A stretch of 64,000 nucleotides of DNA. Origin: Macrostomum lignano. Its lineage: Eukaryota. The stretch spans positions 124,001 to 188,000 of the forward strand of contig NIVC01000920.1 in the NCBI GenBank assembly GCA_002269645.1, given 5' to 3'. Made by a program: the position numbers and the translations under genes. Under the pieces are notes generated by a model that was given only the letters and a program-made list of their open reading frames with translations, did no database searches and was not told the origin of the DNA. This document shows, piece after piece, positions 3,761 to 40,650 of the stretch (positions are counted from its first letter, which is position 1; every line of letters begins with the position of its first letter).

Positions 3761-3874
3761 GCACCCCGAATTTCTCGTTCCTTGATCAGGATTTTCAATG
3801 AGTATTCTTTTAAAAAAACATTGGATTTTACTGTCTTGCTTCATAGAAAAACGTTTATAAGAAGTTCCTATCCA

Positions 3875-4170: not shown

Positions 4171-4201
4171 TTTCTCTTCCTATCCATGGAATAGCCATCT
4201 A

Positions 4202-4405
4202 CTTAGTCCTATCCTAGTCCTATCCTTAGTCCTATCCTTAGTCCTATCCTTAGTCCTATCCTTAGTCCTATCCTTAGTCCTATCCTTAGTCCTATCCTTA
4301 GTCCTATCCTTAGTCCTATCCTTAGTCCTATCCTTAGTCCTATCCTTAGTCCTATCCTTAGTCCTATCCTTAGTCCTATCCTTAGTCCTATCCTTAGTCC
4401 TATCC
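4202..4405. repeat. 12-bp minisatellite (CTTAGTCCTATC)n, ~17 copies
   Basis: Near-perfect tandem units read directly. Confidence 0.97.
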
Positions 4406-5861
4406 GCCTTTGGGTAGAGCAGCTCAGTGAAAAACGCGTCTGACCCCTGGAATTCCGTGTAAGGCCACACATTCATTTGGAGCTTGTGCACAAAAAATTG
4501 ACCGGGGATTGTCGTAATATTTTTTAGTGTTCACCCTGGTGAGCAGGTGAATGAGTAAGTACCTGAGTACAGTAACTGCCGCGCTCTTGTATGTGCTCAG
4601 GACTCAGGAGTCAAGCGGAAAGGTCAGAGTTGCCTCACCGCAATTCTCAGTTTAGCATTGAGCCCCATCAACTGTGCGTCGGTTTTAAGTGCTGTTTTAT
4701 AGCATTTTGCTACTCTGATCACCCGAAGGGCCAAATTCCGTAAAAAGCTGCAATATGCCGTAAATTAGTTGCACGCCACTGGGTATTTTTGTAACCCTCA
4801 AAACAGACAATAGGTGCTTAGATTTGGCCAGGATGTTCACCATTTTTATCGTCGGTGCTGCGATAAAAAACGGCATTGATAATGCGGCACGAGCCACCGT
4901 GGACGCCTGATCCGGATCAAGATTTATGAAGCTCTCACGATCCGATGGCGCATTCGAGATTGGGTCCCTGTCGAGCTGTTCCAAGTACGGACAAGGGAGG
5001 ACGGGGTTTGGCAGGGAGCGGACGCGGAAGAAGGGAAAGTAGGTTTAGCCGGGGCCTGATCGATGGCGCTGGCCCAAATCAGCAGTGATTAGTGTCTGAT
5101 TGCCAGTTAATTGAACGGAAGTCAAACTGAGATAGGAAAAAAAGGATAGAGAGATGGGAATATAGATGGAGCGGAGAGTCTGCGTGGGGGGAAGAGAGCC
5201 AGGAGAAGTGAAGTGCCCGCTGACTGCAGTCTCAGAGTGGCGAAGCTGTGGGCCAACTTCTGTCAGAGAGCGTCGCCGAGTGGGGGGAGCGAATTTTTTT
5301 CTCCTATCGCTAAGTAACTGACTGGCTGGTTGGGAGGCTTCTCCTGGGAGGTGGCGGCTCGCCCAGCACCGGATGAACGAAGTTAGCCGTGCGACTGATT
5401 TGGCAAGAAACGAATAAAGAGCCAGAAGGAACCCTGATGATGAGCTGGCGATGAAGATGGAGGTGTTGAAGAGTCTGGAGAGGCTGTGGGAAGACGTGTC
5501 GAAATCGGATGTCGAGAAGCGACTGCCAGCAAATATTGAGTGGAGTTCGCGGCCTTCCAGCTGCAGGAAATAAAGGCTGCTTTTGCCGCTTCCGAGTTGT
5601 CAAAAAACGAGAAAGCTTTACTCGCTGGTAGTAAGACTTGAGCGATTTTTAGGTGGCGAAGAGTTCCTTAATTGCCACGGTGCTCTCTTTTAGCCAATAG
5701 CAGAAGAGGCGGAAATATCTTCCCCTCGCATCCCAATCCCTTCCTCCAGCCCGATCGACCCCAGAAATTGTGCCTATCAGCATAAAAAAGGTCTCAGACA
5801 GAGCAAAGCTCAACTTTTTGCTGCTTTAGCTGGCAAGAAATTGCTGGAGCAGGAGAAACAA

Positions 5862-8800: not shown

Positions 8801-11800
8801 CCACAAAGCGGACGGTCTCAGCCGGCCCTGGCCGCGACTGGTAGACGAGCCGCATCGGTGTCGAATTGGAGGGTCAGCGGACTTCGCAGCTGTCGCCCCA
8901 TAAGCGCAGATGGACTGCCACGCCCGTCGCTGCGGAGTGGCCCGGTAGTTAAGCAGCAGCTTGGCGAGGTACGCGTCGAACCGGCCCTGGTGCACGGCGA
9001 AGGCCCGCAGCCCCTTCTTGACGGTCTGGACCATGCGCTCGGCGCACCCGTTTGACTGCGGATGATACGGCGGCGAGTGCATCGGCGAGCAGCCGATCTT
9101 CTTGAGCCACTCGTGCAGCTGCTGGTCACGGAACTCCGGAGCATTGTCCGCCACCAAGGTATGCGGCACACCCAGGCGGGAGAAAATCAGGCGGAGTACC
9201 TTGATGACCGTCGTCGCGCTCTTGTCGGCAACAGGCACCGCTTCCGGCCAGCCGGAGAAGGCGTCCACCACAATGAGCAGCAGGCCGAAGCCGGGAACGT
9301 GAGCATGGTCCATGTGCACGCGTCTCCAGGGACCATCTTCAGCCGGCCAGGTGTGGCACGTTCTGGCAGGCATTGGACGGATCTCCGCGCATCGCTGGCA
9401 TTGCTTGACGAAGTTTTCGACGTCCTCGCAGTGACCCGCCACCAGGCTTCCAGCTTGAGTCGATTTCTTGTTGCTAGGGCACCGGAGTCGCGTGAGCCGC
9501 TCGCAGCACGTCTTGCCGCAGCCGGCTAGGCGGGACCACCAGGTCTCTCAGGCAGACGACCCCATTCTCCACTGAGAGCTGCTGGCGGACGGCTTTATAC
9601 GGTCGCTCCGCTCCTTGTTCCACGCATTGCTGCGGATCCTGCGCTTGACAGTACTGGATTACTGGAATGGATTGCTAATCTAGCCCGGAATAGAATGGAT
9701 TGCTAATCTAGCCAGCATCACTGATAAAGGAATAGGATATGAAGGATCTGGATTGCTAATCTAGCCAGCATCACTGAATCTGGATTGCTAATCTAGCCAA
9801 CATCACTGATGCTAATCTGCTAATCTAACATCACTGATTATAATGGATTGCTAATCTAGCCAGCATCACTGATGAAGGAATAGAATGGATTGCTAATCTA
9901 GCCAGCATCACTGATGAAGGAATAGAATGGATTGCTAATCTAGCCAGCATCACTGAAGGAATAGAATGGATTGCTAATCTAGCCAGCATCACTGATGAAG
10001 GAATAGAATGGATTGCTAATCTAGCCAGCATCACTGATGAAGGAATAGAATGGATTGCTAATCTAGCCAGCATCACTGATGAAGGAATAGAATGGATTGC
10101 TAATCTAGCCAACATCACAGATGAAGGAATAGAGTGGATTGCTAATCTAGCCAACATCACAGATGAAGGAATAGAGTGGATGGCTAATCTAGCCAACATC
10201 ACAGATGAAGGAATAGAGTGGATGGCTAATCTAGCCAGCATCACAGATGAAGGAATAGAGTGGATGGCTAATCTAGCCAGCATCACTGATGAAGGAATAG
10301 AGTGGATGGCTAATCTAGCCAGCATCACTGATGAAGGAATAGAGTGGATGGCTAATCTAGCCAGCATCACTGATGAAGTAATAGAGTGGATGGCTAATCT
10401 ATCGTCTCGGCAGTAAGATCATATCAATTTAATATGCAACTAGTTAATCTCGGCTCAGATGAAGAGGATCTGAGGCTCAACTCCGTGAGATATATTGATA
10501 TCACAATGATTTTGTTTTTTTGACAGATAGTCCAGCATGGCAGACATTTTCCACTCGCTTAGCCAGTCGATTAGCAGTTTCTAATAAAGCAAGCTGGCTG
10601 TAATTTCACTCTAGGCAAGCTTCTAAAGCCTTCATTGATCGGATACTGCATGGCCGGTTTGACTGGGATGAGAGATGCGAAGTGAATGTTTCTATCGATT
10701 CCCAGAAAGCTAGCAATGGCGCTCGGGCCTGTTATCTAAGATAGTAGTTCTCCTTTGTTACAAATTGTAGTCATGCTATGCTAGTAAGCTGAGAATGGAT
10801 ATAAATTATACAGCTGGTTCTTTCTCGCTTGCATTGACTGGATTTTGAGTCTGCCGACTGCGGCTGTTCCTCACTGACTTCACGGATCTCCGCTCCCTCT
10901 CTCCACGGATCTCCGCTCCCTCTCTCCACGGATTTCCGCTCCCTCTCTCCACGGATCTCCCTCTGTCCACGGATTTCCGCTCCCTCTCTCCACGGATCTC
11001 CGCTCCCTCTCTCCACGGATCTCCGCTCCCTCTCTCCACGGATCTCCGCTCCCTCTCTCCACGGATCTCCGCTCCCTCTCTCCACGGATCTCCCTCTCTC
11101 CACGGATCTCCGCTCCCTCTCTCCACGGATCTCCGCTCCCTCTCTCCACGGATCTCCCTCTCTCCACGGATCTCCGCTCCCTCTCTCCACGGATCTCCCT
11201 CTCTCCACGGATCTCCGCTCCCTCTCTCCACGGATCTCCCTCTCTCCACGGATCTCCGCTTCCTCTCTCCACGGATCTCCCTCTCTCCACGGATCTCCGC
11301 TCCCTCTCTCCACGGATCTCCGCTCCCTCTCTCCACGGATCTCCGCTCCCTCTCTCCACGGATTTCCGCTCCCTCTCTCCACGGATCTCCCTCTGTCCAC
11401 GGATTTCCGCTCCCTCTCTCCACGGATCTCCCTCTCTCCACGGATCTCCGCTCCCTCTCTCCACGGATCTCCGCTCCCTCTCTCCACGGATCTCCGCTCC
11501 CTCTCTCCACGGATCTCCCTCTCTCCACGGATCTCCGCTCCCTCTCTCCACGGATCTCCGCTCCCTCTCTCCACGGATCTCCCTCTCTCCACGGATCTCC
11601 GCTCCCTCTCTCCACGGATCTCCCTCTCTCCACGGATCTCCGCTTCCTCTCTCCACGGATCTCCCTCTCTCCACGGATCTCCGCTCCCTCTCTCCACGGA
11701 TCTCCGCTCCCTCTCTCCACGGATCTCCGCTCCCTCTCTCCACGGATCTCCCTCTCTCCACGGATCTCCGCTCCCTCTCTCCACGGATCTCCTCTCAATC

Positions 11801-14800
11801 TCTCCACGGATCTCCTCTCAATCTCTCCACGGATCTTCTCTTCTCTCTATGGATCTGCCTCTCCGCTCCCTCTCCCAGCCCTGTCAGGAAGGGGCAATGG
11901 AATGTGTCTGTATCAATGTTCATCTTAATCCTCCTTGATTAGCCAATTGCAAATCATGCAAATTCCGTATTTTCTCTTTCACTGAAAAGATTGCTGGCGG
12001 CAAGAAGGCAACGAGGCGCCAAAGCTTGACCTATCGGGATCCAATTTTTCTTCAGGCTACCGTTGTCTGGCTAACGAAGGCATCAAGCAGGAATGGCTTT
12101 TTGGCTTTCTCTCTTCTCCTAGTGACCGCACAGCAAGAGAGACGCGGCAAAATAAATAGGCACTATAGAGTGGGATTCGGGAGGGCCTATCGTAAATGGC
12201 ATTTGAGGTGCGACAAATCCCACAGCGACTGTGGTGTTAATTCCTTTCCTCCCTTCTCCCTCACTCTCTCCATCTCTTCCCGCACCGTCGGTGGTCTAGG
12301 AGAGGTCAAGCCAGAGCAAAGAAATTCGGCTGCCCTAAGGACTCTCTGGTTGGGGACCAATCAAGCCCCATGCTCCACCCCGCTGCTCCGGCTGAGGCAA
12401 TCTAATTGTCGGAGATTCTGTTAGACCTCCCCTGCTCCCCTGGCCTGCCGCCCTCGGGGGCTGACGCTCTGGCTTGAAAGCTTGCCAGATATTTTGTCCT
12501 GCAAGTCTCTTCATTGCTCTTCTTCGTGTCTCTTCATGTCCAGCTGTATGCATTGCTGAGGTTATTAGCTTAATTAGAATTATTGCGGCAATTATGGATT
12601 TGCTTCAGGTGGGGAAGAAAAATGAGATCCGTACCTCGTATGGAGTAGATGGGGTTTGAATAGAGGTGGAATCAATGAGGTTCAGGTATGGCTGGGATCA
12701 ATGAGGTGTAAGTAGGGCTGGGATCAATGGGGTTTAGTTAAGACTGGGATCAGTGAGGTTCAGGTAGGGCTGGGATCAGTGAGGCTCAGGTAGGGCTGGG
12801 ATCATGGGTGAGGCTCAGGTAGGGCTGGGATCAGTGAGGCTCAGGTAGGGCTGGGATCAGTGAGGCTCAGGTAGGGCTGGGATCAGTGAGGTTCAGGTAG
12901 GGCTGGGATCAGTGAGGCTCAGGTAGGGCTGGGATCATGGGTGAGGCTCAGGTAGGGCTGGGATCAGTGAGGCTCAGGTAGGGCTGGGATCAGTGAGGCT
13001 CAGGTAGGGCTGGGATCAGTGAGGTTCAGGTAGGGCTGGGATCAGTGAGGCTCAGGTAGGGCTGGGATCAGTGAGGTTCAGGTAGGGCTGGGATCAGTGA
13101 GGCTCAGGTAGGGCTGGGATCAGTGAGGTTCAGGTAGGGCTGGGATCAGTGAGGCTCAGGTAGGGCTGGGATCAGTGAGGCTCAGGTAGGGCTGGGACAA
13201 GTGAAGCTCAGGTAGGTTGGGACAAGTGAGACTCAGGTAGGTTGGGACAAGTGAGGCTCAGGTAGGCTGGGACTAGTGAGGCTCAGGTAGGTTGAGACCA
13301 GTGACGTCAATAAGATGTTGATTCCACTGTCAATCACCCATGAGCCGCTAATTCCCGCAGAGCCGCCCAGAATCCTGACCCAGCTGCAGCCGAGTTTCTC
13401 AGTGCAACGTCACTCAAAAATTCGGCTGACCTGCACCGTGACAGGCCGGCCATCCCCGGACAACATGTGGCTGCACAACGGTCGCCGGGTGCTGAACGAG
13501 AACGGGGTCAGCGTGTCAAGGTCGGGCACCCTGACGATTGAGCGAGTCACGGAGCGGCACGCCGGCCTGTACGAGTGCCTGGCGAGGAACAAAGTCGGAG
13601 AGGCGAGGGCGCACACGGCACTGCTGATTGATGGTGCGCGAATCCTGCTCACCACTGCTGCTTTTGCGAATATTAGCTGCGATGACTCCATGAGAGCCAA
13701 CCCGCACGGCACAGAGAGTGTACATGTCTGACGATTAGAAAGTTAGGGGCGCTGTACACTCCGTGTGAGCGTGTGTATGAGCGCGTGCCTGCGTACAGTG
13801 TTGGCACGCTTTTATGTGCTCAGAATTCAACGGAATGGGCGGAATTGCCTCACCGTCTTGGTTGTGGGCCGATGTCGTCGAAGGCGTTGCGGCAGAGTGG
13901 CCACAACCCTTTATAGTTTTTATTAGGCTCGAGTTAAGAGATCACTACTAAAGAGTAGCAAGGAAAGAATTTGAACCCAAATCCATCATATAGTCTTTGC
14001 AATATACAGTTGCACACTGATATAGTTAAACAGAACTTCCAACGCGTGCTTTCACGGCTTTCACGGTTGAGGTCCCGGCTCCTTGGCTGAGTTTGTCCGA
14101 AATTGTCAGAACTTGTCCGAACAATTTTTCTTGTGACTATCAGAGAAACTGTTACTAAAACTACTTGTAGTACTATTCGATTACGGAAGCTGCTAAAATG
14201 TAAGCCAGTAAGTTATAATGAACACTTTACTAAGATCTGCAGATTTGCACATTTAGAGAAAGCATAGTGCAAAAGTGGCGATTCATGAAATAACAAACCC
14301 CAGACTAAGAGCGAAAATCATGTAAAAAATGGGAGAACAATGCATTCAATGCATTGTCAGTGCATTTACTCAGCTTAGATCTGTTTTCCATCGCCCGCCG
14401 CGCAGGCGGTCCCGGCCGATACTCGCTCGAACTTCCGTCGAACATCACGCGGCGCCAGCGCCAGCGCGCCGAGTTGTCATGCGCCGCCGCCTATCCCGCC
14501 ACGTCTGCCCACGAGCCGATCTGGCTGAAGAACGGCAAAGACGTCCACCTGCTGCCCGAGCTGCTCCACAGATTCCTGATTGAGAACGGCTCTTTGATCC
14601 TGCCGACAGTGCTGAGTACCGACTCCGGATTGTACACCTGCCAGACCAGATTGAAGACTCAACTTGCGTCAAGTCGGAGAAGCTCCTCAGTCTACCTGAA
14701 CGTCGTCTACCAGCCGCAGTTTCCTGGCGGCCTGCAGCGGACACAGATTCTCACGGCTGGCCGGCCAGGGGCTGTGGAGTGTCCGGCCCGCTCTAACCCG

Positions 14801-24328: not shown

Positions 24329-25264
24329 ATGCCATTCAAGGTAGGTACATGCTGTTTTTAACAAAAGTATTTTCATGTCGCATGCAGTGAACCTTTTTTT
24401 ACAACAACAAAAAACAGGCCCCGGAGACTGAGAAGTGCATCCGATGCACCAAGAGCGTCTACGCCGCCGAACGCATGGAAGCTGGAGGTCGAATCTGGCA
24501 CAAGATGTGTTTCCGTTGCAAGGAGTGCGACATGAAACTCAAGTGAGCCGGTGTACATAAGGGATGCAGTATCTTGTTTGCAAACGAAAAGTACTGAGAA
24601 AGGACATGAGTCACCCAAGACCAAACCCCTCTATCAATGTCGATCGCCTCTCCCTCCAGGCCTCACCCTCTCCCTTCAGGCCTCACCCTCTCCCTCCAGA
24701 TCTCGCCCTCTCTCCAGGTCTCGCCCTCTCTCTCCAGGTCTCGCCCTCTCTCTCCAGGTCTCCCCTCTCCCTCCAGGTCTCCCCTCTCCCTCCAGGTCTC
24801 CCCTCTCCCTTCAGGTTTCCCATATCGCTCCAGGTCTCCCCTCTCCATCTAGGTCTCACCCTCTCTCTCTCTCCAAGTCTTACCCTCCTCTCCCTCCAGG
24901 TCTCACAATCTCTCTCCAGGTCTCGCCCTCTCCCATCATGTCTAGCCCTCTCCCTCCAGGTCTCCCCTCTCCTTCCAAGTCTCCCCTCTCCTTCCAAGTC
25001 TCCCCTCTCCCTCCAGGTCTCCCCTCCCTCTTCCTCCACTTCAATATCCAATCCTATTCCTCCTTAGTAGTTCTTATCGCCGGTCCAGATAATAATTCAA
25101 ACCATGTGGGACCAAATTAAATAAGCATTTAAATCCCTCAAATCTAAAACTGGAACCCCCGCAGCCTGAACAATTACGCCCAGAACGAGGGCACCCTCTA
25201 TTGCAAGACCCACTACAACAAGATGGTCGTGGCGCTTAACAGCCAGACACCCAACTGCGCCTGA
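24329..25264 (+). CDS. Single-LIM-domain protein (muscle LIM protein / CRIP-like), 78 aa
   Basis: Exons 24329-24340 (MPFK), 24418-24542 and 25165-25264, all GT-AG, give [65 protein letters not shown]... with a complete C2-H-C-C2-C-H LIM consensus. It is missing from the ORF track because the exons are short. Confidence 0.9.
24655..25030. repeat. Pyrimidine-rich ~19-21-bp degenerate minisatellite in LIM gene intron 2
   Basis: CCCTCTCCCTCCAGGTCTC-type units. Confidence 0.9.
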
Positions 25265-29168: not shown

Positions 29169-29411
29169 TCACATTGACATGGGCTTGAAACTGACATCGC
29201 ATTTTTTGCAGTGCAGAGTCGGACTATCCGGCGAGATGCAGCAGCCGCCCAGCTTCACTCGACCGGCCTCGGCGCTGGCCATCAGTTCCGAGCTGGGCCG
29301 GCCATAGACTATGGGCACGATCACCGAGCTATCGGCGTTCAACTGATGGCCACATTGTGGACACGCTTCATCGCTTTCTGCAGATTGCTGCTGCCGCTTT
29401 TGTTCGCTCAT
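29169..29411 (-). CDS. Small zinc-ribbon protein A (CPxC...IVYGxP...LGGCC...HCxxC), 80 aa, intronless
   Basis: Clean ATG-to-stop ORF, GC-rich against AT-rich flanks. Its motif positions are conserved with the paralogue at 30025-30234. Confidence 0.8.
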   Translation of the reverse strand: MSEQKRQQQSAESDEACPQCGHQLNADSSVIVPIVYGRPSSELMASAEAGRVKLGGCCISPDSPTLHCKKCDVSFKPMSM

Positions 29412-30024
29412 TCCTACTTGTGAACTCCCTGAAAATTGGTTCAGGACGGCAATACTCGTAATAAACTAATGTACATGAAGACACTTATAAGCAGCGGGTC
29501 TCAAGGGCTGTTTGGGAGCGGGTCTCAACGGCTGTTTGGGAGAAACAGAGAAGGGATATCAAGATAACTTGAAACGCGTAAGAGGATAAACTCTGTATAA
29601 AATCCAATTTTAATATCAAAATAGACTTATTTGAAGTATCACAGATTTATAATTAAACACAAAGCAAAACATGTTTTAAAAAGCACAAAGGCAGAAACGC
29701 ATATTTAAAAAATAATGTACACGTAGATACGCTTATGTTCAAGAAAAAAGTTAAAAGTACACGAATATCCAAAGTATGGGAGCTTTGGTTTTCGTATATC
29801 TGCAATGAAAACAGTTTTTAAGCTTTAAAAAAGCATATAAGTTACTAAAAGTAGCGTAAAAACTGTTTCAAAGAATTATGCTCGTAATTCACGGAAAAGC
29901 GAAATTGTTCCATAAATTTCATAAATTCATTCTCTTACAGGCTGTGATGCTTGATCGATATTAGAGTTAAACAGTATAAAAATTGAACTGTACTTCGGCA
30001 TGAGTGGATTTTTTCCCCAAAATG

Positions 30025-30234
30025 TTACGGACGAAAATCGAATTTGCACGCTTTGCAGTGCTTGGTTGGACAATCGGGCGTTACGCAACAGCCGCCCAGT
30101 TTCACAGCGCCAGACTTGGCCTTCTCCATCAGTTGGTGGTTTGGTTTGCCATAGACTATGGACACCATGTGTTCTGAGCTGTTGCAGTTGGGACAGGAGG
30201 AACTCTCCTGCTTGTCTCGCTGCTTCTGATCCAT
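30025..30234 (-). CDS. Small zinc-ribbon protein B, 69 aa, intronless paralogue of A
   Basis: MDQKQRDKQESSSCPNCNSSEHMVSIVYGKPNHQLMEKAKSGAVKLGGCCVTPDCPTKHCKACKFDFRP; the ATG at 30234 is preferred over the track start at 30294. Confidence 0.8.
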   Translation of the reverse strand: MDQKQRDKQESSSCPNCNSSEHMVSIVYGKPNHQLMEKAKSGAVKLGGCCVTPDCPTKHCKACKFDFRP

Positions 30235-30923
30235 GATGATGCTATGAACCAGAGCTGGGGCTGCAACTGTTGGATTAACCCGAACCAATTGCATTGAAGA
30301 AAGACAGCATGATGCTATTTTTAGAATTACGTCAGTTTCTATATTTAAATCGGAAGTTAAATTCCTTTAGTTCGGAAATGGAAATCAGATTTCCGGATTA
30401 AAATGCGTGCATAGTATAACAGATTTCCACTTTACTATATTAAGTTTACATATAAGTTTATACTTGCTAATGAATTCAAATAGTTATTTATAGTTTGTTA
30501 CGGATTAAAAAAACAAAGGCAAAGGCGACCATAAAATTTAGCGATGAATGGACAGATTACCGTAGACTTTATTAGAGCGAATAAATATATTGCCGCTGGA
30601 TAGAAAAATTCATTTGAAAGAATAAGAAAAGTTTTCCTCACACTTCTATCATAGGGGAAGCTGCTAAATAAATTATCTGAATTAATGAGCAATTCAATAA
30701 CATGTTCAGAAACTGATATACCTGTGTCATCTGTATAATACGAATACTGCAAAATTAAAAATCGATATAAAATATAATAATTAGCAGAGCTAAAGCACTA
30801 GAGCAGAAAAACCGTTAGCGATTGGAAAAAGTTATGGCAAAATTCATGGAAATTCCATGGAAAATCCTGAAAACTTGACAAACAATGGTCAAGAAAGTTC
30901 AATTTTTCAACCCCGGAAAAAGT

Positions 30924-33900
30924 TCAAGCCTCCTCGGTGACGCCCATCACGTGCCGATTAAACCACAGCACGATGTCGACAAACACGCTGCTCTGAACTG
31001 GGACGCTGCTCATCGGATGGCAATCGTCAGGACACACCAGCAGCCTAGTTGGCACATTCCTCGCTCGCAGAGCCCGGTACAGCTCCCGACCCTGCTGCGG
31101 CGGCACCCGGAGATCCTTGAGTCCCACAGCGACCAGCGTCGGCGTGTTGACTTTGGACGCGTGCGACAGCGGAGACTTGGACCACAGCAGGGCCAGGGTC
31201 TCCGCGTCCAGCAGGCGGTCGTGGCTGAATGGCAGGCCGCTCTGCTCGTAAACCCAGTCGGGAATGTCGCTTCCGCCGACCATGGTGGCCAGGTTGATCA
31301 CCGGGTTGCGCAGCACGGCGGCTTTGAACATGCCGGGCCGCTGGCCAATCAGGTGGCCCCCGAGAAAGCCGCCGTGCGAGCCGCCAAACGCGGCGAGTTT
31401 CTCACCATCAAGACGAGGCAGCGCGGAGTTATCAGCGGACGAAGCCGACTCGGCCAGCGTCTCCTCCACTGCCTGAATGCAGTCGGACACGTCGCGCTCG
31501 CCAATGCCGCCGAGCAGGGAGTCGACGGTCGATTTGCCGAATCCGAGCGAGCCGCGGTAGTTGATCACCAGGACAGCGTAGCCGCACCTGGTTGAGGTAA
31601 GTATGCAGACTTGGGGAAACTCGCTCACCCGCTACCCACCTCACTCCCCGCCCGACACTAACCTCACTCCCTGCCCCGACACCCACCTCACTGCCTGCCC
31701 CGACACCCACCTCATTCCCTGCCCCGACACCCACCTAACTCCCTGCCCCGACACCCACCTCACTCCCTGCCCCGACACCCACCTCACTGCCTGCCCCGAC
31801 ACCCACCTCACTGCCTGGCCCAACACCCACCTCACTGCCTGCCCCGACACCCACCTAACTCCCTGCCCCGACACCCACCTCACTCCCTGCCCCGACACCC
31901 ACCTAACTCCCTGGCCCGACACCCACCTCACTGCCTGGCCCGACACCCACCTCACTGCCTGCCCCGACACCCACCTCACTCCCAGCTAACACAAAACAAA
32001 TCTATAGTGCACCTGGCTAGTCCGCAGACGTAGCGCATATAAGTAGCGGTAAACGATGTGTTAGGTCCGCCGTGCGGAAACGCGATCAACGGAAGCGGCA
32101 GCTCAGTGATTGCTGCTGGCTTCTCTTCGTCTCCCTTTTTGCTATCCTTCTTCTTAGACGAGCCAACTGGCCACACCAGAATCGATTCGAACAATTGATT
32201 CCCGAATTCGGGATGGGCCAATTTCGCCGTGTGCTGCTTCACCCGCCAGGCGATGTCGTTCAGCTTGAAGCAATCGGTCAGACAGGTCCACTTAATGTTT
32301 GAAGTCAGCGGCTTGCTTGCGTCAATGAATCCAGCGGCGATAAATGGCGGCACGTTTGGCGCGCTGGCCTCAACAACCAGCCAGTCGCGATGAAAGTCCA
32401 AGACTTTAGCGCTGCTCGCATCTGGCGGTAGCGGCAGCAGCTCGCCGATCTTGGTCTTGACGTCAATCGCCAGCAGGCAATCTTTGCTCCGATTGATGCT
32501 GCTAAGAACGACGGTGCGACAGTTGGAGGACCAGCAGCGAGACGGCAGGCTGTCGGCGTAAATTCCTGGAAAGCCTGCGCTGCCAGCCTGCGTAGGGAGG
32601 AATGGCGAGTCTGATTGCAGACAGAAACTGGCTTTGAGAGCCTGAGACTGGGCACTGATTACAGATGAGACTGAGGCACTGATTACAGCTGAGACTGAGG
32701 CACTGATTACAGCTGAGACTGAGGCACTGATTAGAGCTGAGACTGAGGCACTGATTGGAGCTGAAACTGAGACACTGATTAGAGCTGAGACTGAGGCACT
32801 GACTACAGCCTGAGACTGAGGGTCTGATTACAGCCTGAGACTGAGGGTCTGATTACAGTCTGTGACTAAGGGGTCTGATTACAGTCTAAGACTAAGAGGT
32901 CTGATTACAGTCTGAGACTAAGAGGTCTGATTACAGTCTGAGACTAAGACGTCTGATTACAGCCCGAGACTGAGGGTCTGATTACAGCCTGAGACTGAGG
33001 CACTGACTACAGCCTGAGACTAGGGGGTCTGATTACAGTCTGAGACTAAGGGGTCTGATTACAGTCTGAGACTAAGAGGTCTGATTACAGTCTGAGACTA
33101 AGGGGTCTGATTACAGCCTGAGACTAATGGGTCTGATTACAGCCTGAGACTAATGGGTCTGATTACAGTCTGAGACTAAGGGGTCTGACTACAGTCTGAG
33201 ACTGGGGGTCTCATTACAGCCTGAGACTGGGGCTCTGATTACAGCCGGAGACTGGGGCTCTGATTACAGCCGGAGACTGGGGCTCTGATTACAACCCTAA
33301 CACCCACCCCGCGATTACGCACCTGATTAACAAAATCGATAATGAACCGTATATCCTTTGTGGCCCAATCGCACCAGATGAGCCGTCTACACTGTTTATG
33401 CGGACCTGATGGCTCATTCTGCAGCCACACCAGCTGGGTCTGGCACGGGCTGAACCTGGGCGATGACACGGCTCGAGTATCGTGACCAATCACCGCGCAC
33501 TCTCCGCTGCGAAAGTCCAGATAGTAAATTGCGGACGGCCTCTGATTGCAATAGATTACACCCAGCTGATAGGGCAGCTCTTTGTAGCCAACAAAGACTA
33601 CGCCAGCGTCGTCAGGAGCCCAGCAAGGTTCCGTTGGCAGCACGCCGTCGGGTATGCCATCGTCAAGCACGGTGACGACCTCGGAGTCAACATCGAGAGT
33701 GCACAGCACTGGTCGCTTGTACTCGGATAGTTGCTCGCCAAAGTGTTCCACGCTATCATACTGCTTGCCAACTGATTTGGCCTCGCCAGGTCTGTGAAAA
33801 TATCAGACAGACAAAAACAATAGTAGATATTTTACAAGCCCAAATTCAGGACTCTAGAAATGTAAGTTAATAATGATGATTAATTGACTGCACCTGCCCA

Positions 33901-34916
33901 AATTGGGCTAGATGTGCAACCGACAGCTCAGCCGCAGCTATTGCGCGGCGCATCTGAAGGCTGCGTACGGCTGTTCAGTCCAAGGACTGGGGGGTCGCCA
34001 CACGCACCCTCAATTACCCCAGCTAATGCTGGCACCTAGCAGAGCAAGTCCCAGGTTCGATTCCTAATTTATATTTATCTGGCTATCGTGCACAAAAATT
34101 CATTTGGGGCTTCCGCAATTCTCGCCACCAAGGGTCAACCCGGGCCATTAGGCACCCAGTGTACACTGTCTGTGCCTAACGAACAGAAATTGAGCGTGTG
34201 CCTGATTACTCATCCGTGCAAGTGTTCAGTGGTCAGTTAAAGGTGCATGATGACTGCTTTAATCGCTACAGAATGTAAAAAACAACAACTTACTTCCCGG
34301 CGCTCTCTTCGCTAAACGCATCAGCGGCAAAGTAAGACGCATTCTTTGGCTGTTTCTTTTCGGCAACGTACAGCAGATGTCCCTCATTGCAGGACCACTG
34401 GCACGCGCCCAGCTCGGGACCGTACACCGCCCCGTGCTTGGCTTTCTCGCTCAGATCGATGCTCTTAATAAAACGGGACTCATTGTAGACGTGGACTACG
34501 AATTTATCGGCATTGTCACTGCCGGACCCTTCAGCTTTGAGCTTGAGCAGCACGGCCCGATGGTCGCCCCCGCTGCAGTAGACATCCCACAGGGTGGTCG
34601 GATCCCGCAGTACAGGATCCGAGTCAACCAGATCTCCAGTTGGCAGTACAACGGCAGTTTTCACCAGCGTGCGATTCTTTTGACTAGCCAAATCTTGCAC
34701 CTGATAGACGCACCGAGTTCTGATGGCGTCACTGAATGGATATTGAGGCAGCAGCTGGGCAGACTGGGGCACTGGATAGGCGGCCAGGTTAGAATAGACC
34801 TGAGCCACCTCCTTGGCTGGCTTCACAGATGACGGCTTCATCATCAAGCTGAGTGATTGCGAACCTGCGACTTCTGCTTTTTGCGAGGCGAAAAGAACGG
34901 AAGAAAATCTGAGCAT
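30924..34916 (-). CDS. APEH: Acylamino-acid-releasing enzyme (acylpeptide hydrolase, peptidase S9C), 776 aa
   Basis: Exons 34916-34294, 33791-33323, 32587-32013 and 31587-30924 (2331 nt, in frame, GT-AG). Motifs PHGGP, NYRGSLGFG, nucleophile GGSHGG, GLKDLRVP (Asp) and DDCHP (His). Confidence 0.95.
31640..31985. repeat. 24-bp minisatellite (CACCCACCTCACTCCCTGCCCCGA)n in an APEH intron
   Basis: Tandem units read directly. Confidence 0.95.
32640..33290. repeat. 24-to-26-bp minisatellite (CTGATTACAG core) in an APEH intron
   Basis: Period is 24 at the left (32653 to 32677) and 26 at the right (32901 to 32927). Confidence 0.93.
33868..34250. mobile_element. Abutting SINE fragments: family A 3' half (-) and family B-like head and body (+)
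   Basis: 33868-34036 matches the family A tail; CAGGTTCGATTCC B-box at ~34052. Confidence 0.68.
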
Positions 34917-37663: not shown

Positions 37664-38785
37664 CTAACGATGTCGTTGCCGTTGACTGCAGTTAGTCGGA
37701 CCTGGCTGTTTCAGCATGCTGCGAAATCTTTTATGCTTCGCACGCGACAGATTTGGATATTTTGAAGGTCCCAGTTGCCAGCGTGGATCGAACCTTCGTT
37801 GATGCTTTTTTTGACCGCAGTGCTCAAATGTTGCTAGCAGAAATTTTTTAGCTAGAATCGGGCATGGCCGCTCAGGAGGCGCCTGCGTATCAGGTAGAGA
37901 CGGCAGTAATTCTTGAGCGACAATTGGCCCTGACCGCTCAGGAGGCGCCTGTGCATCGGGTAGAGACGGCAGTAATTCTCGAGCGACAATTGGCCCTGAC
38001 CGCTCAGGAGGCGCCTGTGCATCGGGTAGAGACGGCAGTAATTCTCGAGCGACAATTGGCCCTGACCGCTCAGGAGGCGCCTGTGCATCGGGTAGAGACG
38101 GCAGTAATTCTCGAGCGACAATTGGCCCTGACCGCTCAGGAGGCGCCTGTGCATCGGGTAGAGACGGCAGTAATTCTCGAGCGACAATTGGCCCTGACCG
38201 CTCAGGAGGCGCCTGTGCATCGGGTAGAGACGGCAGTAATTCTCGAGCGACAATTGGCCCTGACCGCTCAGGAGGCGCCTGTGCATCGGGTAGAGACGGC
38301 AGTAATTCTCGAGCGACAATTGGCCCTGACCGCTCAGGAGGCGCCTGTGCATCGGGTAGAGACGGCAGTAATTCTCGAGCGACAATTGGCCCTGACCGCT
38401 CAGGAGGCGCCTGCGTATCAGGTAGAGACGGCAGTAATTCTCGAGCGACAATTGGCCCTGACCGCTCAGGAGGCGCCTGCGTATCAGGTAGAGACGGCAG
38501 TAATTCTTGAGCGACAATTGGCCCTGACCGCTCAGGAGGCGCCTGTGCATCGGGTAGCTGCTGCTCAGAGGGCCAATCGTACTCAGACACAGCGTCCAAG
38601 GCTTCTATAGAAAAAAGTAGCCAGAGCGAAAATGGGTACAGAGACAGCCAATTGTACTCAGACACAGTATCCAAGACTTCTGTAGATAGAGATAGCCAGG
38701 GTTCCTGTGGCCATGGGTACAGAAGCGGGTCTTCCTCCGACTCCAACAATATTGGAGGATCTTCATCAGCAGGCTGGTCGGCCAT
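37664..38785 (-). CDS. Intronless orphan ORF (373 aa): acidic N-terminus, ~10.5 x 22-aa Pro-rich repeat, basic C-terminus
   Basis: The frame stays open through ~75 aa of non-repeat sequence before and ~66 aa after the 66-bp array. TTTCTTTTCAG acceptor 2 nt upstream of the ATG at 38785. Confidence 0.5.
   Translation of the reverse strand: MADQPADEDPPILLESEEDPLLYPWPQEPWLSLSTEVLDTVSEYNWLSLYPFSLWLLFSIEALDAVSEYDWPSEQQLPDAQAPPERSGPIVAQELLPSLPDTQAPPERSGPIVARELLPSLPDTQAPPERSGPIVARELLPSLPDAQAPPERSGPIVARELLPSLPDAQAPPERSGPIVARELLPSLPDAQAPPERSGPIVARELLPSLPDAQAPPERSGPIVARELLPSLPDAQAPPERSGPIVARELLPSLPDAQAPPERSGPIVARELLPSLPDAQAPPERSGPIVAQELLPSLPDTQAPPERPCPILAKKFLLATFEHCGQKKHQRRFDPRWQLGPSKYPNLSRAKHKRFRSMLKQPGPTNCSQRQRHR
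37868..38560. repeat. 66-bp tandem repeat, ~10.5 copies
   Basis: CCGCTCAGGAGG recurs at 37868, 37934 and onward. Confidence 0.97.
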
Positions 38786-40650
38786 GTCTGAAAAGAAATG
38801 GTAAACAAACCATACTTGCATTTCTTAGTTATTCCATTACTTTTATGCTCCAGAAGCTATATGAGATCATCTTTGCGATTGGGATTAATATTCAAGTTTA
38901 CACACTGTTTCCATAAAAAGGCTCAACTTAGGATAAATAAGTTTTCTATTGCTTGATTTTTTTAACACTGCAAAACCTAGCAATAGTTGGTTTACTCAAT
39001 GATAGTGAAGTCACAGCTGAACTTCTAGACTATAAATGTTCTGCCACTTGTCTAATATTATAGGCCAATATATTGAACCAGTTAAAAGTTAAGGCAATTG
39101 GTGATATACAATATAGATTAGGGATAATATGAACAAACATATCTTGATGCTGCATTTTTTATACCTAACAATCATACTTTGCACATTCAGTCCAGAGTGG
39201 GGAACAATTAAGTTTAAATTTAGAGTCACTTATTATAATTATTAATCATATATTTTTGATATTATATAATGATATATAGGTGCCAGTCATTTTATTGAAT
39301 ACCTGTTTGTCAAATGCAGTTTGTCATAATATTTGTTTCCATATCCAATTTCCAATTGGTGTCCATACCTAATGCATAAGTCATTTCTGGCCTATTGGCT
39401 TTTAGGTGGCAGCTAAATATCAATATATTATTGTTTAAGTAATTTATTATAAAGTTTAATTATTCTAACAAGGTTATTTTTTCTTAAGTAAAATAGTGGG
39501 TTAGCATTCAGTAAATAGGTGGCCAAAACATTAGTTGTAGGCTAGAATCATAGTGCCACTATAATAGCCATTATTTTTGTAAAACTTTACAATAAAGCTA
39601 CAATAAGTTACAAAAAAGTCAAGTAAAACTCTACAAATTGAAAAATCTCAGTTAGCTAAGTATTCATCTATCTAGTCCTTATGAATTATTAGGATTAGAA
39701 AGGCAGAGCCTAACAAAGCTGCCTCCTAAATTGATACTCAAAGGTAGCATCAACTACCATAGAGGTCAGTAGCAATGTTCCAATAAAAGCTTGTAGCAAA
39801 TTGCTAACATGATCCAGTGCTAGCAAGGAGTGGCAGCTTAGGCAAAAGTACTTATTTACCAAAATAAGTACAATGAACTAAGATCTGATAGTATTTGACT
39901 AACTGTCTTGACCTAGCAAACTTCAATTGACAAAATTTACAAACCTAAGTGGCAACTTATCTAGCTATCAATCTTTTAGTGCAAGCCTTTGGCTAGAGAA
40001 TTTCATGATTTCTGTTCTCTCTGTATTTTTTACAGGGTTCTATTTTCTTTTTTGTGTCCTACACTTTATCTTCTTTTACTTTTTGCATTTGATTTTTTAG
40101 AAAGACATATGAAGTAATAAAGCATGAACCCATTCAATATTAATGACATGGCCATTGGCACTCTATAAGATTTATTGACATGGCTGCTGTCTTTGTATAA
40201 AACATTTTATATTGAAGGAAGGCCCCACAGTACAAACATGGCCACCATGTCTAGAACCTTTAATATTATAGACATATTGGCCTCCATAGTCAGGATCATG
40301 TCAACTGTGTGCCAAAACATTTTTTAAATAAAAAAGATGTGTGCGCCATTCGCATAAAGAGATTTACCTTGTGCCAAATTTTAGTCAATTTTCTATACAC
40401 ACTAAATATACTTTTTTGATATAACTAATTTTTAAGACATAGCTAAAGTATAAGAAAATTAAAATAACATAGACAATAAAACAATTTAAAATAAAAATAT
40501 TTCATTCAAGTAATAAAAATGTTTTAAAATATGAAAGTTTTATCCTTAAAATTGATCTAATAGAGTTTTAATTTAAATATACATGTTTTAATCTTTTTAT
40601 ATTAAATATGCTGCATTCTAAACACTATGCAGCCTGCTCTATATTGCACT

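What the first reader, a model, noticed from the sequence alone, without database searches (positions are those of the whole stretch)
29169..30234. Tandem pair of intronless, bacterial-looking zinc-ribbon microproteins in an animal genome
Seen: two head-to-tail minus-strand ORFs (80 and 69 aa) share CPxC...IVYG[RK]P..[EQ]LM..A..G.VKLGGCC[IV][ST]PD[SC]PT.HCK.C...F[KR]P. Their N-termini and flanks have diverged, which implies selection on the protein. From recollection rather than a search, this CPxC/IxYGxP/LGGC/CxxC signature belongs to small uncharacterised prokaryotic and phage proteins, and I know no standard metazoan family with it. Inference: a horizontally acquired gene that was domesticated and duplicated between ordinary host genes, possibly a small metal-binding, redox or defence module. 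The two CxxC pairs plus the GGCC loop give 6 Cys that could bind Zn or an Fe-S cluster.
Basis: partly seen in the sequence, partly recalled or inferred. Interest (0 to 1): 0.82.

Follow-up and report, generated by a model that had tools for sequence, protein, structure and literature searches.

The report
Bacterial-type zinc-ribbon microprotein pair in flatworm
Two small intronless genes next to the APEH gene of the flatworm Macrostomum lignano encode members of a large, unnamed and almost wholly bacterial family of zinc-ribbon microproteins, so they are most likely an old bacterial gene transfer that the worm still transcribes; what the proteins do is unknown.

Summary
ORF A (29169-29411, minus strand, 80 aa) and ORF B (30025-30234, minus strand, 69 aa) are paralogues: 57% identical over 47 aa, E 4e-22.

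The window is Macrostomum lignano contig NIVC01000920.1. Three homeologous long-read contigs all carry APEH -> B -> A, which rules out contamination. GenBank annotates both genes from transcripts, as BOX15_Mlig010596g1 and g2. Each annotated 5' end directly follows an AG acceptor; A's matches the worm's spliced-leader motif. I infer a trans-spliced bicistronic unit.

An exhaustive HMMER search found 2421 related 50%-identity clusters. Every named hit is bacterial except a bdelloid rotifer protein. Phage hits are rare, and no Pfam, NCBIfam, PHROGs or PADLOC family or PDB fold matches.

The family has five invariant Cys, not six: CPxC, GGC and CxxC. Models give a zinc ribbon with a beta-alpha-beta insert (pLDDT 78 and 82).

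Horizontal transfer is well supported. Duplication inside the worm is not shown, because A and B are as far from each other as from bacterial members. Between homeologues A changed only synonymously (0 nonsynonymous, 2 synonymous), whereas B changed only nonsynonymously (6 and 0).

Function is unknown; my best guess is a metal-stabilised binding module. This is a solid new HGT case of moderate interest.

The parts
29169..29411 (-). ORF A coding sequence, 80 aa. The GenBank model BOX15_Mlig010596g2 runs 29169-29426 because its reading frame stays open up to the mRNA 5' end.
   Evidence: It keeps every invariant residue of the family. The AF2 model has pLDDT 77.7.
30025..30234 (-). ORF B coding sequence, 69 aa. 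The GenBank-type model BOX15_Mlig010596g1 runs 30025-30264.
   Evidence: It keeps every invariant residue of the family. The AF2 model has pLDDT 81.5.
29429..29434 (-). TTTCAG immediately upstream of the annotated 5' end of the ORF A mRNA (first base 29428). Putative spliced-leader trans-splice acceptor.
   Evidence: Sequence. The 85-aa annotated product starts at the first full codon after this AG. The M. lignano SL acceptor motif is [T/C]TNCAG (PMC8629364). No SL reads were examined, so this is inferred.
30267..30272 (-). CAACAG immediately upstream of the annotated 5' end of the ORF B mRNA (first base 30266). Putative trans-splice acceptor that matches the motif only partly (CAG).
   Evidence: Sequence. 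The 79-aa annotated product starts two bases after this AG. Motif. Inferred.
29352..29363 (-). ORF A zinc knuckle 1, CPQC (Cys17, Cys20).
   Evidence: Invariant or near-invariant family columns.
29295..29312 (-). ORF A IVYGRP motif (residues 34-39): end of strand 1 and the following turn.
   Evidence: I, Y, G and P are invariant or near-invariant in the family. Strand 31-36 in the model.
29238..29252 (-). ORF A LGGCC motif (residues 54-58). Cys57 is invariant; Cys58 is variable in the family.
   Evidence: first C in 155/158 domains, second C in 77/158.
29199..29210 (-). ORF A zinc knuckle 2, CKKC (Cys68, Cys71).
   Evidence: The last Cys is replaced by Asp or His in 11 of 158 family domains, as expected of a metal ligand.
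30184..30195 (-). ORF B zinc knuckle 1, CPNC (Cys14, Cys17).
30085..30099 (-). ORF B LGGCC motif (residues 46-50).
30046..30057 (-). ORF B zinc knuckle 2, CKAC (Cys60, Cys63).
29493..29542 (.). 24-nt tandem repeat in the B-A spacer. There are 2 copies here and at least 4 in the homeologous loci. It accounts for part of the spacer length variation.
30924..34910 (-). Context: the upstream host gene APEH (acylaminoacyl-peptidase), 774 aa over about 4 kb, so it contains introns. It lies on the same strand, and its stop codon is about 660 nt before the ORF B acceptor.
   Evidence: (PF19283 APEH_N, PF00326 Peptidase_S9).
24329..25264 (+). Context: the downstream host gene, a 78-aa LIM-domain protein on the opposite strand.
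   Evidence: with coordinates converted from L001 14163-15098. The same neighbour is present in L029.

Best explanation
ORF A and ORF B are two real, transcribed, intronless genes of Macrostomum lignano. They encode cytosolic members (no signal peptide) of an unnamed and overwhelmingly bacterial family of small zinc-ribbon proteins.

The family signature is CPxC - (V/I)(V/I)PI(V)YGxP - helix - G.V.LGGC - P..hCxxC - aromatic. The gene or genes entered the flatworm lineage from a bacterium by horizontal transfer. This happened before the chromosome or genome duplications that produced the three homeologous copies now present. The genes have since taken on host-like GC content.

They are now expressed from one transcriptional unit downstream of APEH, and the two mRNAs are separated by spliced-leader trans-splicing at AG acceptors 17 nt (A) and 32 nt (B) upstream of the start codons.

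The most likely mechanism is as follows. The two CxxC knuckles hold one structural metal ion, probably Zn(Cys)4. This clamps a small beta-alpha-beta insert whose invariant IxYGxP and LGGC residues form the functional surface. On this reading the proteins are metal-stabilised binding modules for a protein or nucleic-acid partner rather than enzymes.

Shown: the genes, their family membership, the taxonomic distribution, the linkage to host genes, and the three loci. Inferred from the annotation and the sequence: transcription, trans-splicing and the bicistronic unit. Inferred from conservation and models only: metal binding and the binding-module role.
For: Identity and linkage
- The window is GCA_002269645.1 contig NIVC01000920.1 of M. 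lignano.
- Three contigs of a PacBio/Canu assembly all carry APEH -> B -> A. LIM follows in the window locus (L001) and in L029. In L028 a retrotransposon lies downstream instead.

Family
- Exhaustive HMMER found 2421 representative clusters at E<=1e-3 and 97 at E<=1e-10.
- Identified organisms are Bacillota, Bacteroidota, Chloroflexota, Alphaproteobacteria, Thermodesulfobacteriota, Planctomycetota, Actinomycetota, Coatesbacteria, Fusobacteriota and Cyanobacteria.
- Bacterial members carry signal peptides or lipoboxes, or are fused to OmpA, UDG, MobA-like NTP transferase, or DUF6794+WYL domains.
- The only other animal hit is Didymodactylos carnosus.

Expression
- Both genes are in the GenBank annotation. 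That annotation was built only from RNA-seq transcripts, which were cut at trans-splice and poly(A) signals.
- Both genes carry the same transcriptional-unit prefix, Mlig010596.
- Both partial coding sequences begin right after an AG. A's acceptor is TTTCAG, which matches the published motif [T/C]TNCAG.
- The spacers of about 590 and 660 nt are under the 1 kb operon threshold used for this species.

Constraint
- All six copies have intact reading frames.
- ORF A differs between homeologues at 2 of 243 nt, both synonymous, against about 3.3% divergence in its flanks. About 8 differences would be expected, giving a hand-calculated Poisson P of about 0.014.
- Both paralogues keep every invariant family column.
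- The ORFs are GC islands like host exons.

Fold and metal
- AF2 models have pLDDT 77.7 and 81.5 and the same topology.
- There are sub-threshold hits to many zinc-ribbon models, and both knuckles align to the TFIIS/RPB9 ribbon 1qyp.
- The last Cys is replaced only by Asp or His.
Against: - I examined no RNA-seq, SL-read, poly(A), Ribo-seq or peptide data. Expression and trans-splicing rest on the published annotation pipeline and on where the annotated 5' ends fall.
- B's acceptor, CAACAG, matches the motif only partly. The L028 copy of A has lost its AG.
- The g-numbers in this nomenclature can also number gene copies. The bicistron inference therefore rests on the shared prefix alone.
- ORF B differs between homeologues at 6 of 210 nt. 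All six changes are nonsynonymous, and the rate equals that of the flanks. This fits relaxed constraint.
- My hand count for the 47-codon core of A versus B gives a dN/dS of roughly 0.5, which is only moderate constraint.
- No tree could be built because the script machine was lost. The donor lineage and the monophyly of A+B are therefore untested.
- I could check the taxonomy of only a small sample of the 2421 hits, so distant homologues in other animals are not excluded.
- No conserved bacterial gene neighbourhood, no solved structure and no curated family gives a function.
- The tools return no model coordinates, so the metal-site geometry could not be measured.
Confidence: 0.72

Rival explanations
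1. The pair was not duplicated in the worm. Instead it arrived as a ready-made bacterial two-gene cassette, and spliced-leader trans-splicing then allowed both cistrons to be expressed.
For: A and B are no closer to each other (57%, 67.8 bits) than A is to bacterial P0173 (61%, 66.6 bits) or B is to P0190 (55%). In the family alignments some bacterial members exceed the A-B identity. Adjacent paralogue pairs exist in bacteria: P0169 and P0211 lie 30 nt apart after ruvB and are 65% identical. No DNA similarity survives outside the coding cores.
Against: A and B share features that vary in the family. These are a polar N-terminal tail of similar make-up (M1, R6, Q9 and S13 align), PT.HCK before knuckle 2, and the C-terminal F(K/R)P. 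At 60 aligned positions the identity differences are within noise. The bacterial pair I found consists of lipoproteins of the GGC(M/I) type, not the leaderless GGCC type.
Confidence: 0.2
2. One or both genes are transcribed relics with no current function. The transfer was real, but ORF B in particular is drifting.
For: ORF B has 6 nonsynonymous and 0 synonymous differences between homeologues, at the same rate as its flanks. One of them, K61E, hits a position that is K or R in 68% of the family. If B is trans-spliced, the SL's own terminal AUG would open an out-of-frame upstream reading frame that overlaps B's start codon (sequence). No function or partner is known.
Against: Reading frames are intact in all six copies. 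Every invariant residue is kept in both genes despite deep A-B divergence at synonymous sites (my rough hand count gives dS of about 0.7). ORF A shows only synonymous change. The ORFs keep exon-like GC content within AT-rich spacers. Six differences are too few to separate drift from positive selection (P about 0.19 for 6 nonsynonymous to 0 synonymous under neutrality, hand-calculated).
Confidence: 0.2
3. The family is ancient and was inherited vertically in eukaryotes, then lost from nearly all sequenced animals.
For: Two distant animals (a macrostomid flatworm and a bdelloid rotifer) and one marine eukaryote-metatranscriptome sequence (P0008) carry it. I could not inspect the taxonomy of most weak hits.
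Against: This would need very many independent losses. The animal sequences are no closer to each other than to bacterial ones (46% against 45-55%). Bdelloids are well known for bacterial gene acquisition (established knowledge). The family's diversity, domain fusions and export signals are all bacterial.
Confidence: 0.05
4. The segment is bacterial contamination or an assembly chimera.
For: The protein family is bacterial and the genes have no introns.
Against: The same gene order, flanked by intron-containing APEH and by LIM or a retrotransposon, occurs on three separate long-read contigs of 83-749 kb. The copies are 97% identical and differ by their own indels. The spacers are AT-rich, minisatellite-laden DNA typical of this worm. 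The number of sigma-70-like promoter matches is not above chance.
Confidence: 0.01

Closest known systems
Classical Cys4 zinc ribbons (for example the TFIIS/RPB9 C-terminal ribbon in PDB 1qyp, ribosomal protein L37Ae/eL43, and Pfam Zn_ribbon_8 / the FmdB CxxC_CxxC_SSSS family)
   Same: There are two CxxC knuckles, the first being CPxCG. Each sits at a beta-hairpin turn, and an aromatic residue follows the second knuckle. Both knuckles align to 1qyp and L37Ae in the profile search. Of 94 family members, 44 hit Zn_ribbon_8 and 18 hit TIGR02605, all below threshold.
   Different: About 45 residues lie between the knuckles. They form a conserved strand-helix-strand unit carrying IxYGxP and LGGC, which none of those families has. 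A fifth Cys is invariant. No hit reaches any curated cut-off, and Foldseek finds no PDB analogue (best E 1.4 and 2.4).
The unnamed bacterial family found here (for example P0173, P0190, WP_245546524.1 of Ilyobacter polytropus, and the N-terminal domain of ~190-aa Bacillota proteins)
   Same: The full signature, the length and all invariant residues are shared. Identity is 45-61% over the core. The worm proteins belong to the leaderless stand-alone form that keeps GGCC.
   Different: The worm genes are eukaryotic genes. They have AG acceptors, a host gene neighbourhood and host-like GC content. They also have polar Gln/Ser/Lys-rich N-terminal tails and an F(K/R)P C-terminus.
Rubredoxin and rubredoxin-like domains
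   Same: The CPxCG-type knuckle is shared. JGI labelled one family member 'rubredoxin', and a few members hit rubredoxin-like NCBIfam models below threshold.
   Different: The knuckle order is reversed (CPxC comes first here). The spacing and the insert differ, and the rubredoxin aromatic core motif is absent. No hit passes threshold. Whether the metal is Fe or Zn is unknown.
Documented bacteria-to-animal gene transfers in small invertebrates (for example the many foreign genes of bdelloid rotifers)
   Same: The pattern is the same: a patchy animal distribution of a bacterial family, an intronless gene embedded among host genes, host-like base composition, and transcription. A bdelloid, D. carnosus, independently carries a member of this same family.
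   Different: The recipient here is a macrostomid flatworm. The cargo is a roughly 70-80-aa microprotein of unknown function rather than an enzyme. There are two divergent copies that appear to be expressed as a trans-spliced bicistron.

Membership tests
Unnamed bacterial CPxC...IxYGxP...LGGC...CxxC microprotein family | Significant profile similarity over the whole domain | tested here: met
   A profile of A+B retrieves 2421 clusters at E<=1e-3. A 65-sequence family profile scores ORF A (as P0001) at E 1.1e-20, 91 bits.
Unnamed bacterial CPxC...IxYGxP...LGGC...CxxC microprotein family | All invariant or near-invariant columns present (C, P, C; I, Y, G, P; G; L, G, G, C; C, C) | tested here: met
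   Both A and B keep every one.
Cys4 zinc ribbon (structural class) | Two CxxC knuckles at hairpin turns that flank beta-strands | tested here: met
   The sequence, the AF2 secondary structure, and knuckle alignments to 1qyp and L37Ae.
Cys4 zinc ribbon (structural class) | Stoichiometric binding of Zn by the four knuckle Cys | not testable with these tools
   The only support is indirect: the last Cys is replaced solely by Asp or His in 11 of 158 domains. No model coordinates are available to measure geometry.
Pfam Zn_ribbon_8 / NCBIfam FmdB CxxC_CxxC_SSSS | Score at or above the curated gathering cut-off | tested here: not met
   ORF A scores 15.1 bits against a cut-off of 34.4, and 17.4 against 31.3. 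Family members are likewise sub-threshold.
Rubredoxin | CxxCG...CPxCG order with the rubredoxin core, and a score above cut-off | tested here: not met
   Only weak rubredoxin-like hits, at E 0.39 for A. The knuckle order is reversed (sequence).
Horizontally acquired gene in an animal | Relatives overwhelmingly non-metazoan, with no broad animal family | tested here: met
   Limitation: only a sample of hits carries an organism name.
Horizontally acquired gene in an animal | Physical linkage to bona fide host genes on long-read contigs | tested here: met
   Three contigs, each with APEH (which has introns) upstream, and LIM or a retrotransposon downstream.
Horizontally acquired gene in an animal | Phylogeny that nests the animal sequences inside a donor clade | not tested
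   The script machine was lost. I have only pairwise identities.
Horizontally acquired gene in an animal | Transcription in the host | tested here: inconclusive
   Both genes are in a purely transcript-derived annotation, but I examined no read-level data. Searches of supplementary expression tables found neither g1 nor g2; the only Mlig010596 entry was g9.
SL trans-spliced operon gene of M. lignano | mRNA 5' end directly after a [T/C]TNCAG acceptor | tested here: inconclusive
   A's acceptor TTTCAG is an exact match. B's CAACAG matches only CAG. SL-containing reads were not available.
SL trans-spliced operon gene of M. lignano | Same-strand neighbours less than 1 kb apart (repeat-adjusted) | tested here: met
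   About 660 nt from the APEH stop to the B acceptor, and about 590 nt from the B stop to the A acceptor. Threshold.
Known anti-phage defence proteins (PADLOC) or phage protein families (PHROGs) | A match to any model | tested here: not met
   0 of 94 members hit PADLOC. Three single weak PHROG hits, and none for ORF A.

The most novel reading that the evidence does not exclude
A bacterial two-gene cassette of a still-undescribed metal-binding microprotein fold was transferred intact into a flatworm. It survives as a spliced-leader trans-spliced eukaryotic operon, and the two divergent proteins work together, for example as a heterodimeric metal, redox or immunity-type module.

This would be a direct case of a prokaryotic operon being converted into an animal operon. 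It would also be the first experimental handle on a family of more than 2400 clusters that has no annotation.
Probability: 0.12. Interest if true: 0.75.

Novelty: new member of a known kind. Interest (0 to 1): 0.48.

Why it matters
Convincing bacteria-to-animal transfers outside rotifers, nematodes and arthropods are few. This one sits in a transgenic, RNAi-tractable model flatworm, so the function of the acquired genes can be tested directly.

The cargo is unusual. It is a roughly 70-80-aa microprotein from a very large bacterial family that has no Pfam or NCBIfam entry, no solved structure and no known role. A phenotype or a binding partner found in the worm would therefore also annotate thousands of bacterial genes.

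The apparent expression as a trans-spliced bicistron shows one way that promoter-less foreign genes can become expressed in animals that have operons. A bdelloid rotifer carries a member of the same family, which suggests that the family is readily kept after transfer.

Tried and rejected
- Curated libraries gave nothing above threshold: Pfam, NCBIfam, PHROGs and PADLOC.
- Foldseek of both models against the PDB gave no hit better than E 1.4. BFVD gave one uncharacterised phage protein.
- PDB sequence and profile searches matched only generic zinc knuckles.
- A single-sequence word-index search with ORF A returned only itself.
- The first genome scan failed because the 65-sequence alignment had no conserved 7-10-column stretch. 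A narrower alignment worked, but its pattern GxVKLGGCC[IVY] samples only part of the family.
- I rejected a phage origin: 1 of 50,697 phage records and no confirmed IMG/VR match. Plasmid carriage is negligible at 2 of 72,556 records.
- I looked for a conserved bacterial neighbourhood to infer function and found none for the stand-alone form. Only the ~190-aa Bacillota fusion sits in a repeated module: DUF6884, then the fusion protein, then PRiA4_ORF3, with Imm5_like following in L010. I judged the immunity-protein idea from those loci too thin to adopt.
- Literature and supplementary-table searches for Mlig010596 expression or orthologues found nothing usable.
- Rfam and a search for the SL sequence found nothing in the window.
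- The script machine was lost. There is therefore no tree and no formal dN/dS; the codon counts were done by hand.
- I rejected contamination or chimera because three syntenic long-read contigs carry the genes.
Full report
**1. What is in the sequence**

The minus strand carries two ATG-initiated ORFs head to tail.
- ORF A: 29169-29411, 80 aa.
- ORF B: 30025-30234, 69 aa from MDQK. An in-frame ATG at 30294 would extend it to 89 aa.

BLASTP of A against B gives 27/47 identities (57%), E 4e-22. Outside the coding cores the two units share no detectable DNA similarity. The N-terminal tails align only loosely. Both ORFs are GC-rich islands (A about 0.60, B about 0.50) in spacers of 0.27-0.32 GC. 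The last APEH exon next door is similar at about 0.65.

**2. Where the window comes from, and whether the genes belong to the animal**

The exact product of ORF A is recorded on contig NIVC01000920.1 (409,684 bp) of assembly GCA_002269645.1. NIVC is the Mlig_3_7 assembly of the flatworm Macrostomum lignano. Mlig_3_7 is a Canu assembly of PacBio reads.

On the minus strand the order is:
- APEH, 774 aa spread over about 4 kb and so containing introns (Pfam APEH_N and Peptidase_S9);
- then B, then A;
- then a LIM-domain gene on the other strand.

Two further contigs repeat the arrangement APEH -> B -> A: NIVC01002273.1 (83 kb, L028) and NIVC01000172.1 (749 kb, L029). LIM follows in L029, and an LTR-retrotransposon pol gene follows in L028. 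The three loci are about 97% identical and differ by their own indels. The B-A spacer is 0.6 kb here and 1.5-1.6 kb in the others. This fits the known redundancy of this assembly, which comes from duplication of the large chromosome. Contamination or a chimeric join is therefore excluded.

**3. Evidence for expression and processing (indirect)**

GenBank lists the homeologous copies of B as 'hypothetical protein BOX15_Mlig010596g1, partial' (PAA59357.1, PAA88890.1). It lists A as 'BOX15_Mlig010596g2, partial' (PAA59356.1, PAA88889.1).

The Mlig_3_7 annotation was built only from RNA-seq-derived transcriptional units. The TBONE pipeline cut these units into genes at experimentally mapped trans-splice and poly(A) sites, and ORFs were then called with TransDecoder. 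The name prefix is shared by transcriptional units that are at least 95% identical. A and B are far less similar than that, so a shared prefix implies that at least one transcriptional unit spans both genes. One caveat applies: g-numbers can also number gene copies.

The annotated products are 5'-partial, and each starts at the first full codon after an AG.
- A: ...AATTTTCAG|GG AGT TCA..., so the mRNA starts at 29428.
- B...ATCCAACAG|TT GCA GCC..., so the mRNA starts at 30266.

The published spliced-leader acceptor motif of this species is [T/C]TNCAG, placed exactly at the junction. A matches it exactly. B matches only CAG.

The same-strand spacers are about 660 nt (APEH stop to B acceptor) and about 590 nt (B stop to A acceptor). 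Both are below the 1 kb operon threshold used for this genome.

I therefore infer a trans-spliced bicistronic unit, possibly extending from APEH. I examined no read-level data. Supplementary expression and orthology tables from two papers contained neither gene.

**4. What the proteins are**

Neither protein reaches the cut-off of any Pfam or NCBIfam model.

I ran an exhaustive HMMER search with a profile of A+B against 1.84 billion cluster representatives. It returned 2421 proteins at E<=1e-3 and 97 at E<=1e-10. The consensus of 158 domains is:

CPxCgs..vvpIvYG.P..el.e.a..Gev.LGGC[C/V/I]i..d.P..hCk.C...[F/W]

Five Cys are invariant: CPxC, GGC and CxxC. The second Cys of GGCC is present in only 77 of 158 domains. 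The last Cys is replaced by Asp (9 domains) or His (2), which is the pattern expected of a metal ligand.

Most members are stand-alone proteins of 60-100 aa. Thirty-seven of 158 have N-terminal extensions of more than 30 aa, and many of these are signal peptides or lipoprotein leaders. Others are fused to OmpA, UDG, MobA-like NTP transferase or DUF6794+WYL domains. By eye, the exported members nearly always lack the second Cys of GGCC, whereas the leaderless ones, including A and B, keep it.

Members give many sub-threshold hits to generic zinc-ribbon models: Zn_ribbon_8 for 44 of 94, YjdM for 26, TFIIS for 15 and FmdB for 18. A family profile aligns both knuckles to the TFIIS/RPB9 ribbon 1qyp and to L37Ae.

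AlphaFold2 models built with about 100-sequence alignments have pLDDT 77.7 (A) and 81.5 (B). Both show the same layout: knuckle 1, strand, helix, strand, knuckle 2, terminal strand(s). Foldseek finds no PDB analogue, with best E-values of 1.4 and 2.4. In BFVD it finds one uncharacterised Caudovirales protein at TM 0.62.

The proteins are therefore zinc-ribbon variants with a distinctive conserved beta-alpha-beta insert. They belong to a large family that has not been curated or characterised.

**5. Taxonomic distribution**

Every hit that carries an organism name is bacterial, with three exceptions: the M. lignano proteins themselves, a protein of the bdelloid rotifer Didymodactylos carnosus, and one Coprococcus phage.
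- MAGs: Thermodesulfobacteriota, Deltaproteobacteria, Ktedonobacterales, Coatesbacteria, Planctomycetota and Actinomycetota.
- Twenty-six GTDB species genomes, mostly Bacillota, including the isolates Bacillus marasmi, Ureibacillus suwonensis, Paradesulfitobacterium ferrireducens, Clostridium paridis and Geosporobacter subterraneus. Bacteroidota, Chloroflexota and an alphaproteobacterium are also represented.
- Ilyobacter polytropus and Synechococcus elongatus replicons.

Phage carriage is marginal: 1 of 50,697 phage records, and no confirmed IMG/VR match with the pattern used.

The D. carnosus gene is also an intronless 72-aa ORF in AT-rich DNA. It lies about 5 kb from a gene for a microbial-type PARG. 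One further sequence comes from a marine eukaryote metatranscriptome catalogue (P0008).

A profile built from the eukaryote-derived sequences found no additional animals among 5.8 billion clusters.

The limits of this evidence are that most metagenomic hits carry no taxonomy, only the best 150 or 120 hits are listed per search, and I could not build a tree. Even so, the distribution is what horizontal transfer predicts and what a metazoan family does not.

**6. Selection**

*Between the window and the two other homeologues.* ORF A differs at 2 of 243 nt, and both changes are synonymous (AAG/AAA Lys, CAC/CAT His). Its flanks differ at about 3.3-4%. At the flank rate about 8 differences would be expected, which gives a hand-calculated Poisson P of about 0.014.

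ORF B differs at 6 of 210 nt. All six changes are nonsynonymous (R6P, E10K, M23V, T52S, D54N, K61E), and the rate equals that of the flanks. None touches an invariant column. K61E, however, falls at a position that is K or R in 68% of the family. Six nonsynonymous changes and no synonymous ones do not differ significantly from neutral expectation (P about 0.19).

*Between A and B.* My hand count over the 47-codon core gives about 30 nonsynonymous and about 16 synonymous differences. This corresponds to dN about 0.36, dS about 0.7 and a ratio of about 0.5. The estimate is rough because no script was available.

All six copies keep intact reading frames and every invariant residue. I conclude that A is under purifying selection and that B's recent history is ambiguous.

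**7. Was the pair duplicated in the worm?**

This is not established. A-B similarity (57%, 67.8 bits) is matched by A to bacterial P0173 (61%, 66.6 bits) and by B to P0190 (55%, 59.3 bits). Several bacterial members equal or exceed the A-B identity in the family alignments. Adjacent paralogue pairs also occur in bacteria: P0169 and P0211 lie 30 nt apart and are 65% identical.

In favour of an in-host duplication, or at least a common immediate ancestor, A and B share traits that vary in the family. These are the polar N-terminal tails, PT.HCK, and the C-terminal F(K/R)P.

In either case the pair predates the divergence of the three homeologous loci.

**8. Function**

The bacterial gene neighbourhoods of stand-alone members are not conserved. 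They include:
- toxin-antitoxin modules;
- AbiEii;
- an IS110 transposase;
- ruvB;
- ferritin and Fur genes in Ilyobacter;
- arrays of small unannotated ORFs.

In Bacillota the domain heads a ~190-aa protein with a DUF6438-like C-terminus (sub-threshold match). That protein sits in a module repeated across genera: DUF6884, then the fusion protein, then PRiA4_ORF3, followed in L010 by an Imm5-like gene. No PADLOC model matches any member.

From the anatomy, my best guess is as follows. The four knuckle Cys hold a structural metal, probably zinc. The invariant IxYGxP/LGGC surface binds a partner, and the fifth invariant Cys is either part of that surface or an additional ligand. The family's success both inside and outside the cytoplasm, and as an add-on to unrelated domains, fits a self-contained binding module better than an enzyme. 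This step is inference only.

**9. Comparison with known systems, and novelty**

Structurally the proteins are zinc ribbons. They fail the curated thresholds of every named zinc-ribbon or rubredoxin family, and they have an insert that those families lack.

As a genomic event this is a further case of bacterium-to-invertebrate gene transfer. I found no paper that mentions these genes or this family.

I rate it a new member of a known kind, with three attractive features:
- the recipient is an experimentally tractable flatworm;
- the cargo is a microprotein from a very large unannotated family;
- expression appears to use the host's trans-splicing and operon machinery.

**10. Verdict**

Four subsidiary claims are weak, unproven or inaccurate: the phage link, duplication in the host, selection on both copies, and a six-Cys ligand set. 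Function remains unknown.

Interest is moderate, at 0.48.

Noticed in passing
window 1-64000, e.g. 6587-7493, 10881-11836, 12667-13291, 32639-33293, 57290-57786, 63362-63989: The window is packed with minisatellite arrays: 50 TRF rows, periods of 12-178 nt, and up to 52 copies. These arrays account for the extreme GC and AT skews in several 2-kb bins. This is typical of the repeat-rich M. lignano genome.
   Followed up: partly
window 37664-38821 (-), with a repeat at 37868-38557: A 385-aa ORF (called as a 373-aa gene with no Pfam hit) consists largely of 10.5 near-perfect copies of a 66-nt (22-aa) unit. It is either a repeat protein or a repeat read as an ORF.
   Followed up: no
window 29493-29542; L028 and L029 upstream of ORF A: The 24-nt unit AGCGGGTCTCAACGGCTGTTTGGG in the B-A spacer has 2 copies here and at least 4 in the homeologous loci. 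The spacer is 0.6 kb here against 1.5-1.6 kb there.
   Followed up: partly
L028 11850-11873 (homeologue of window 29427-29440): In one homeologous copy the TTTTCAG acceptor in front of ORF A reads TTGCATG, so that copy may not be trans-spliced at the same site. The coding sequence is unchanged.
   Followed up: no
L028 17836-20240: Downstream of the pair, where the other two loci carry the LIM gene, one homeologue has an LTR-retrotransposon pol gene (1921 aa; RVT_1, RNase H, integrase).
   Followed up: no
L030 (Didymodactylos carnosus CAJNOK010006949.1) 7914-8132 and 1142-2897: The bdelloid rotifer carries its own intronless 72-aa member of the family in AT-rich DNA. It lies about 5 kb from a gene for a microbial-type poly(ADP-ribose) glycohydrolase (PARG_cat_microb). 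Both look like separate bacterial acquisitions.
   Followed up: partly
L008, L010, L014, L023 around 2570-5240: Bacillota of different genera share a near-identical layout: DUF6884 protein (463 aa), then a 190-aa zinc-ribbon + DUF6438-like protein, then a PRiA4_ORF3 protein (217-234 aa). L023 has a 1081-aa ORF in place of the DUF6884 protein. An Imm5-like gene follows in L010. The ORF coordinates are identical in two loci, which suggests a mobile or recently exchanged module.
   Followed up: partly
L036 6001-6564 (JGI metagenome 3300033146): A bacterial tandem pair of lipoprotein-type family members (85 and 91 aa, 65% identical) lies directly after ruvB. Tandem duplication of this gene is therefore not peculiar to the worm.
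   Followed up: partly
family sequences listed: Exported members (with a signal peptide or lipobox) almost always have V, I or M in place of the second Cys of GGCC. Leaderless members mostly keep GGCC. A small subgroup ends knuckle 2 with CKRD instead of CxxC.
   Followed up: no
window 30266-30234 and 29428-29411 (-): If the 35-nt spliced leader, which ends in AUG, is added at the inferred acceptors, its AUG is out of frame with both ORFs. It would open a 5-codon upstream ORF that ends just before A's start codon. It would also open a reading frame of about 37 codons that overlaps B's start codon, which could lower translation of B.
   Followed up: no
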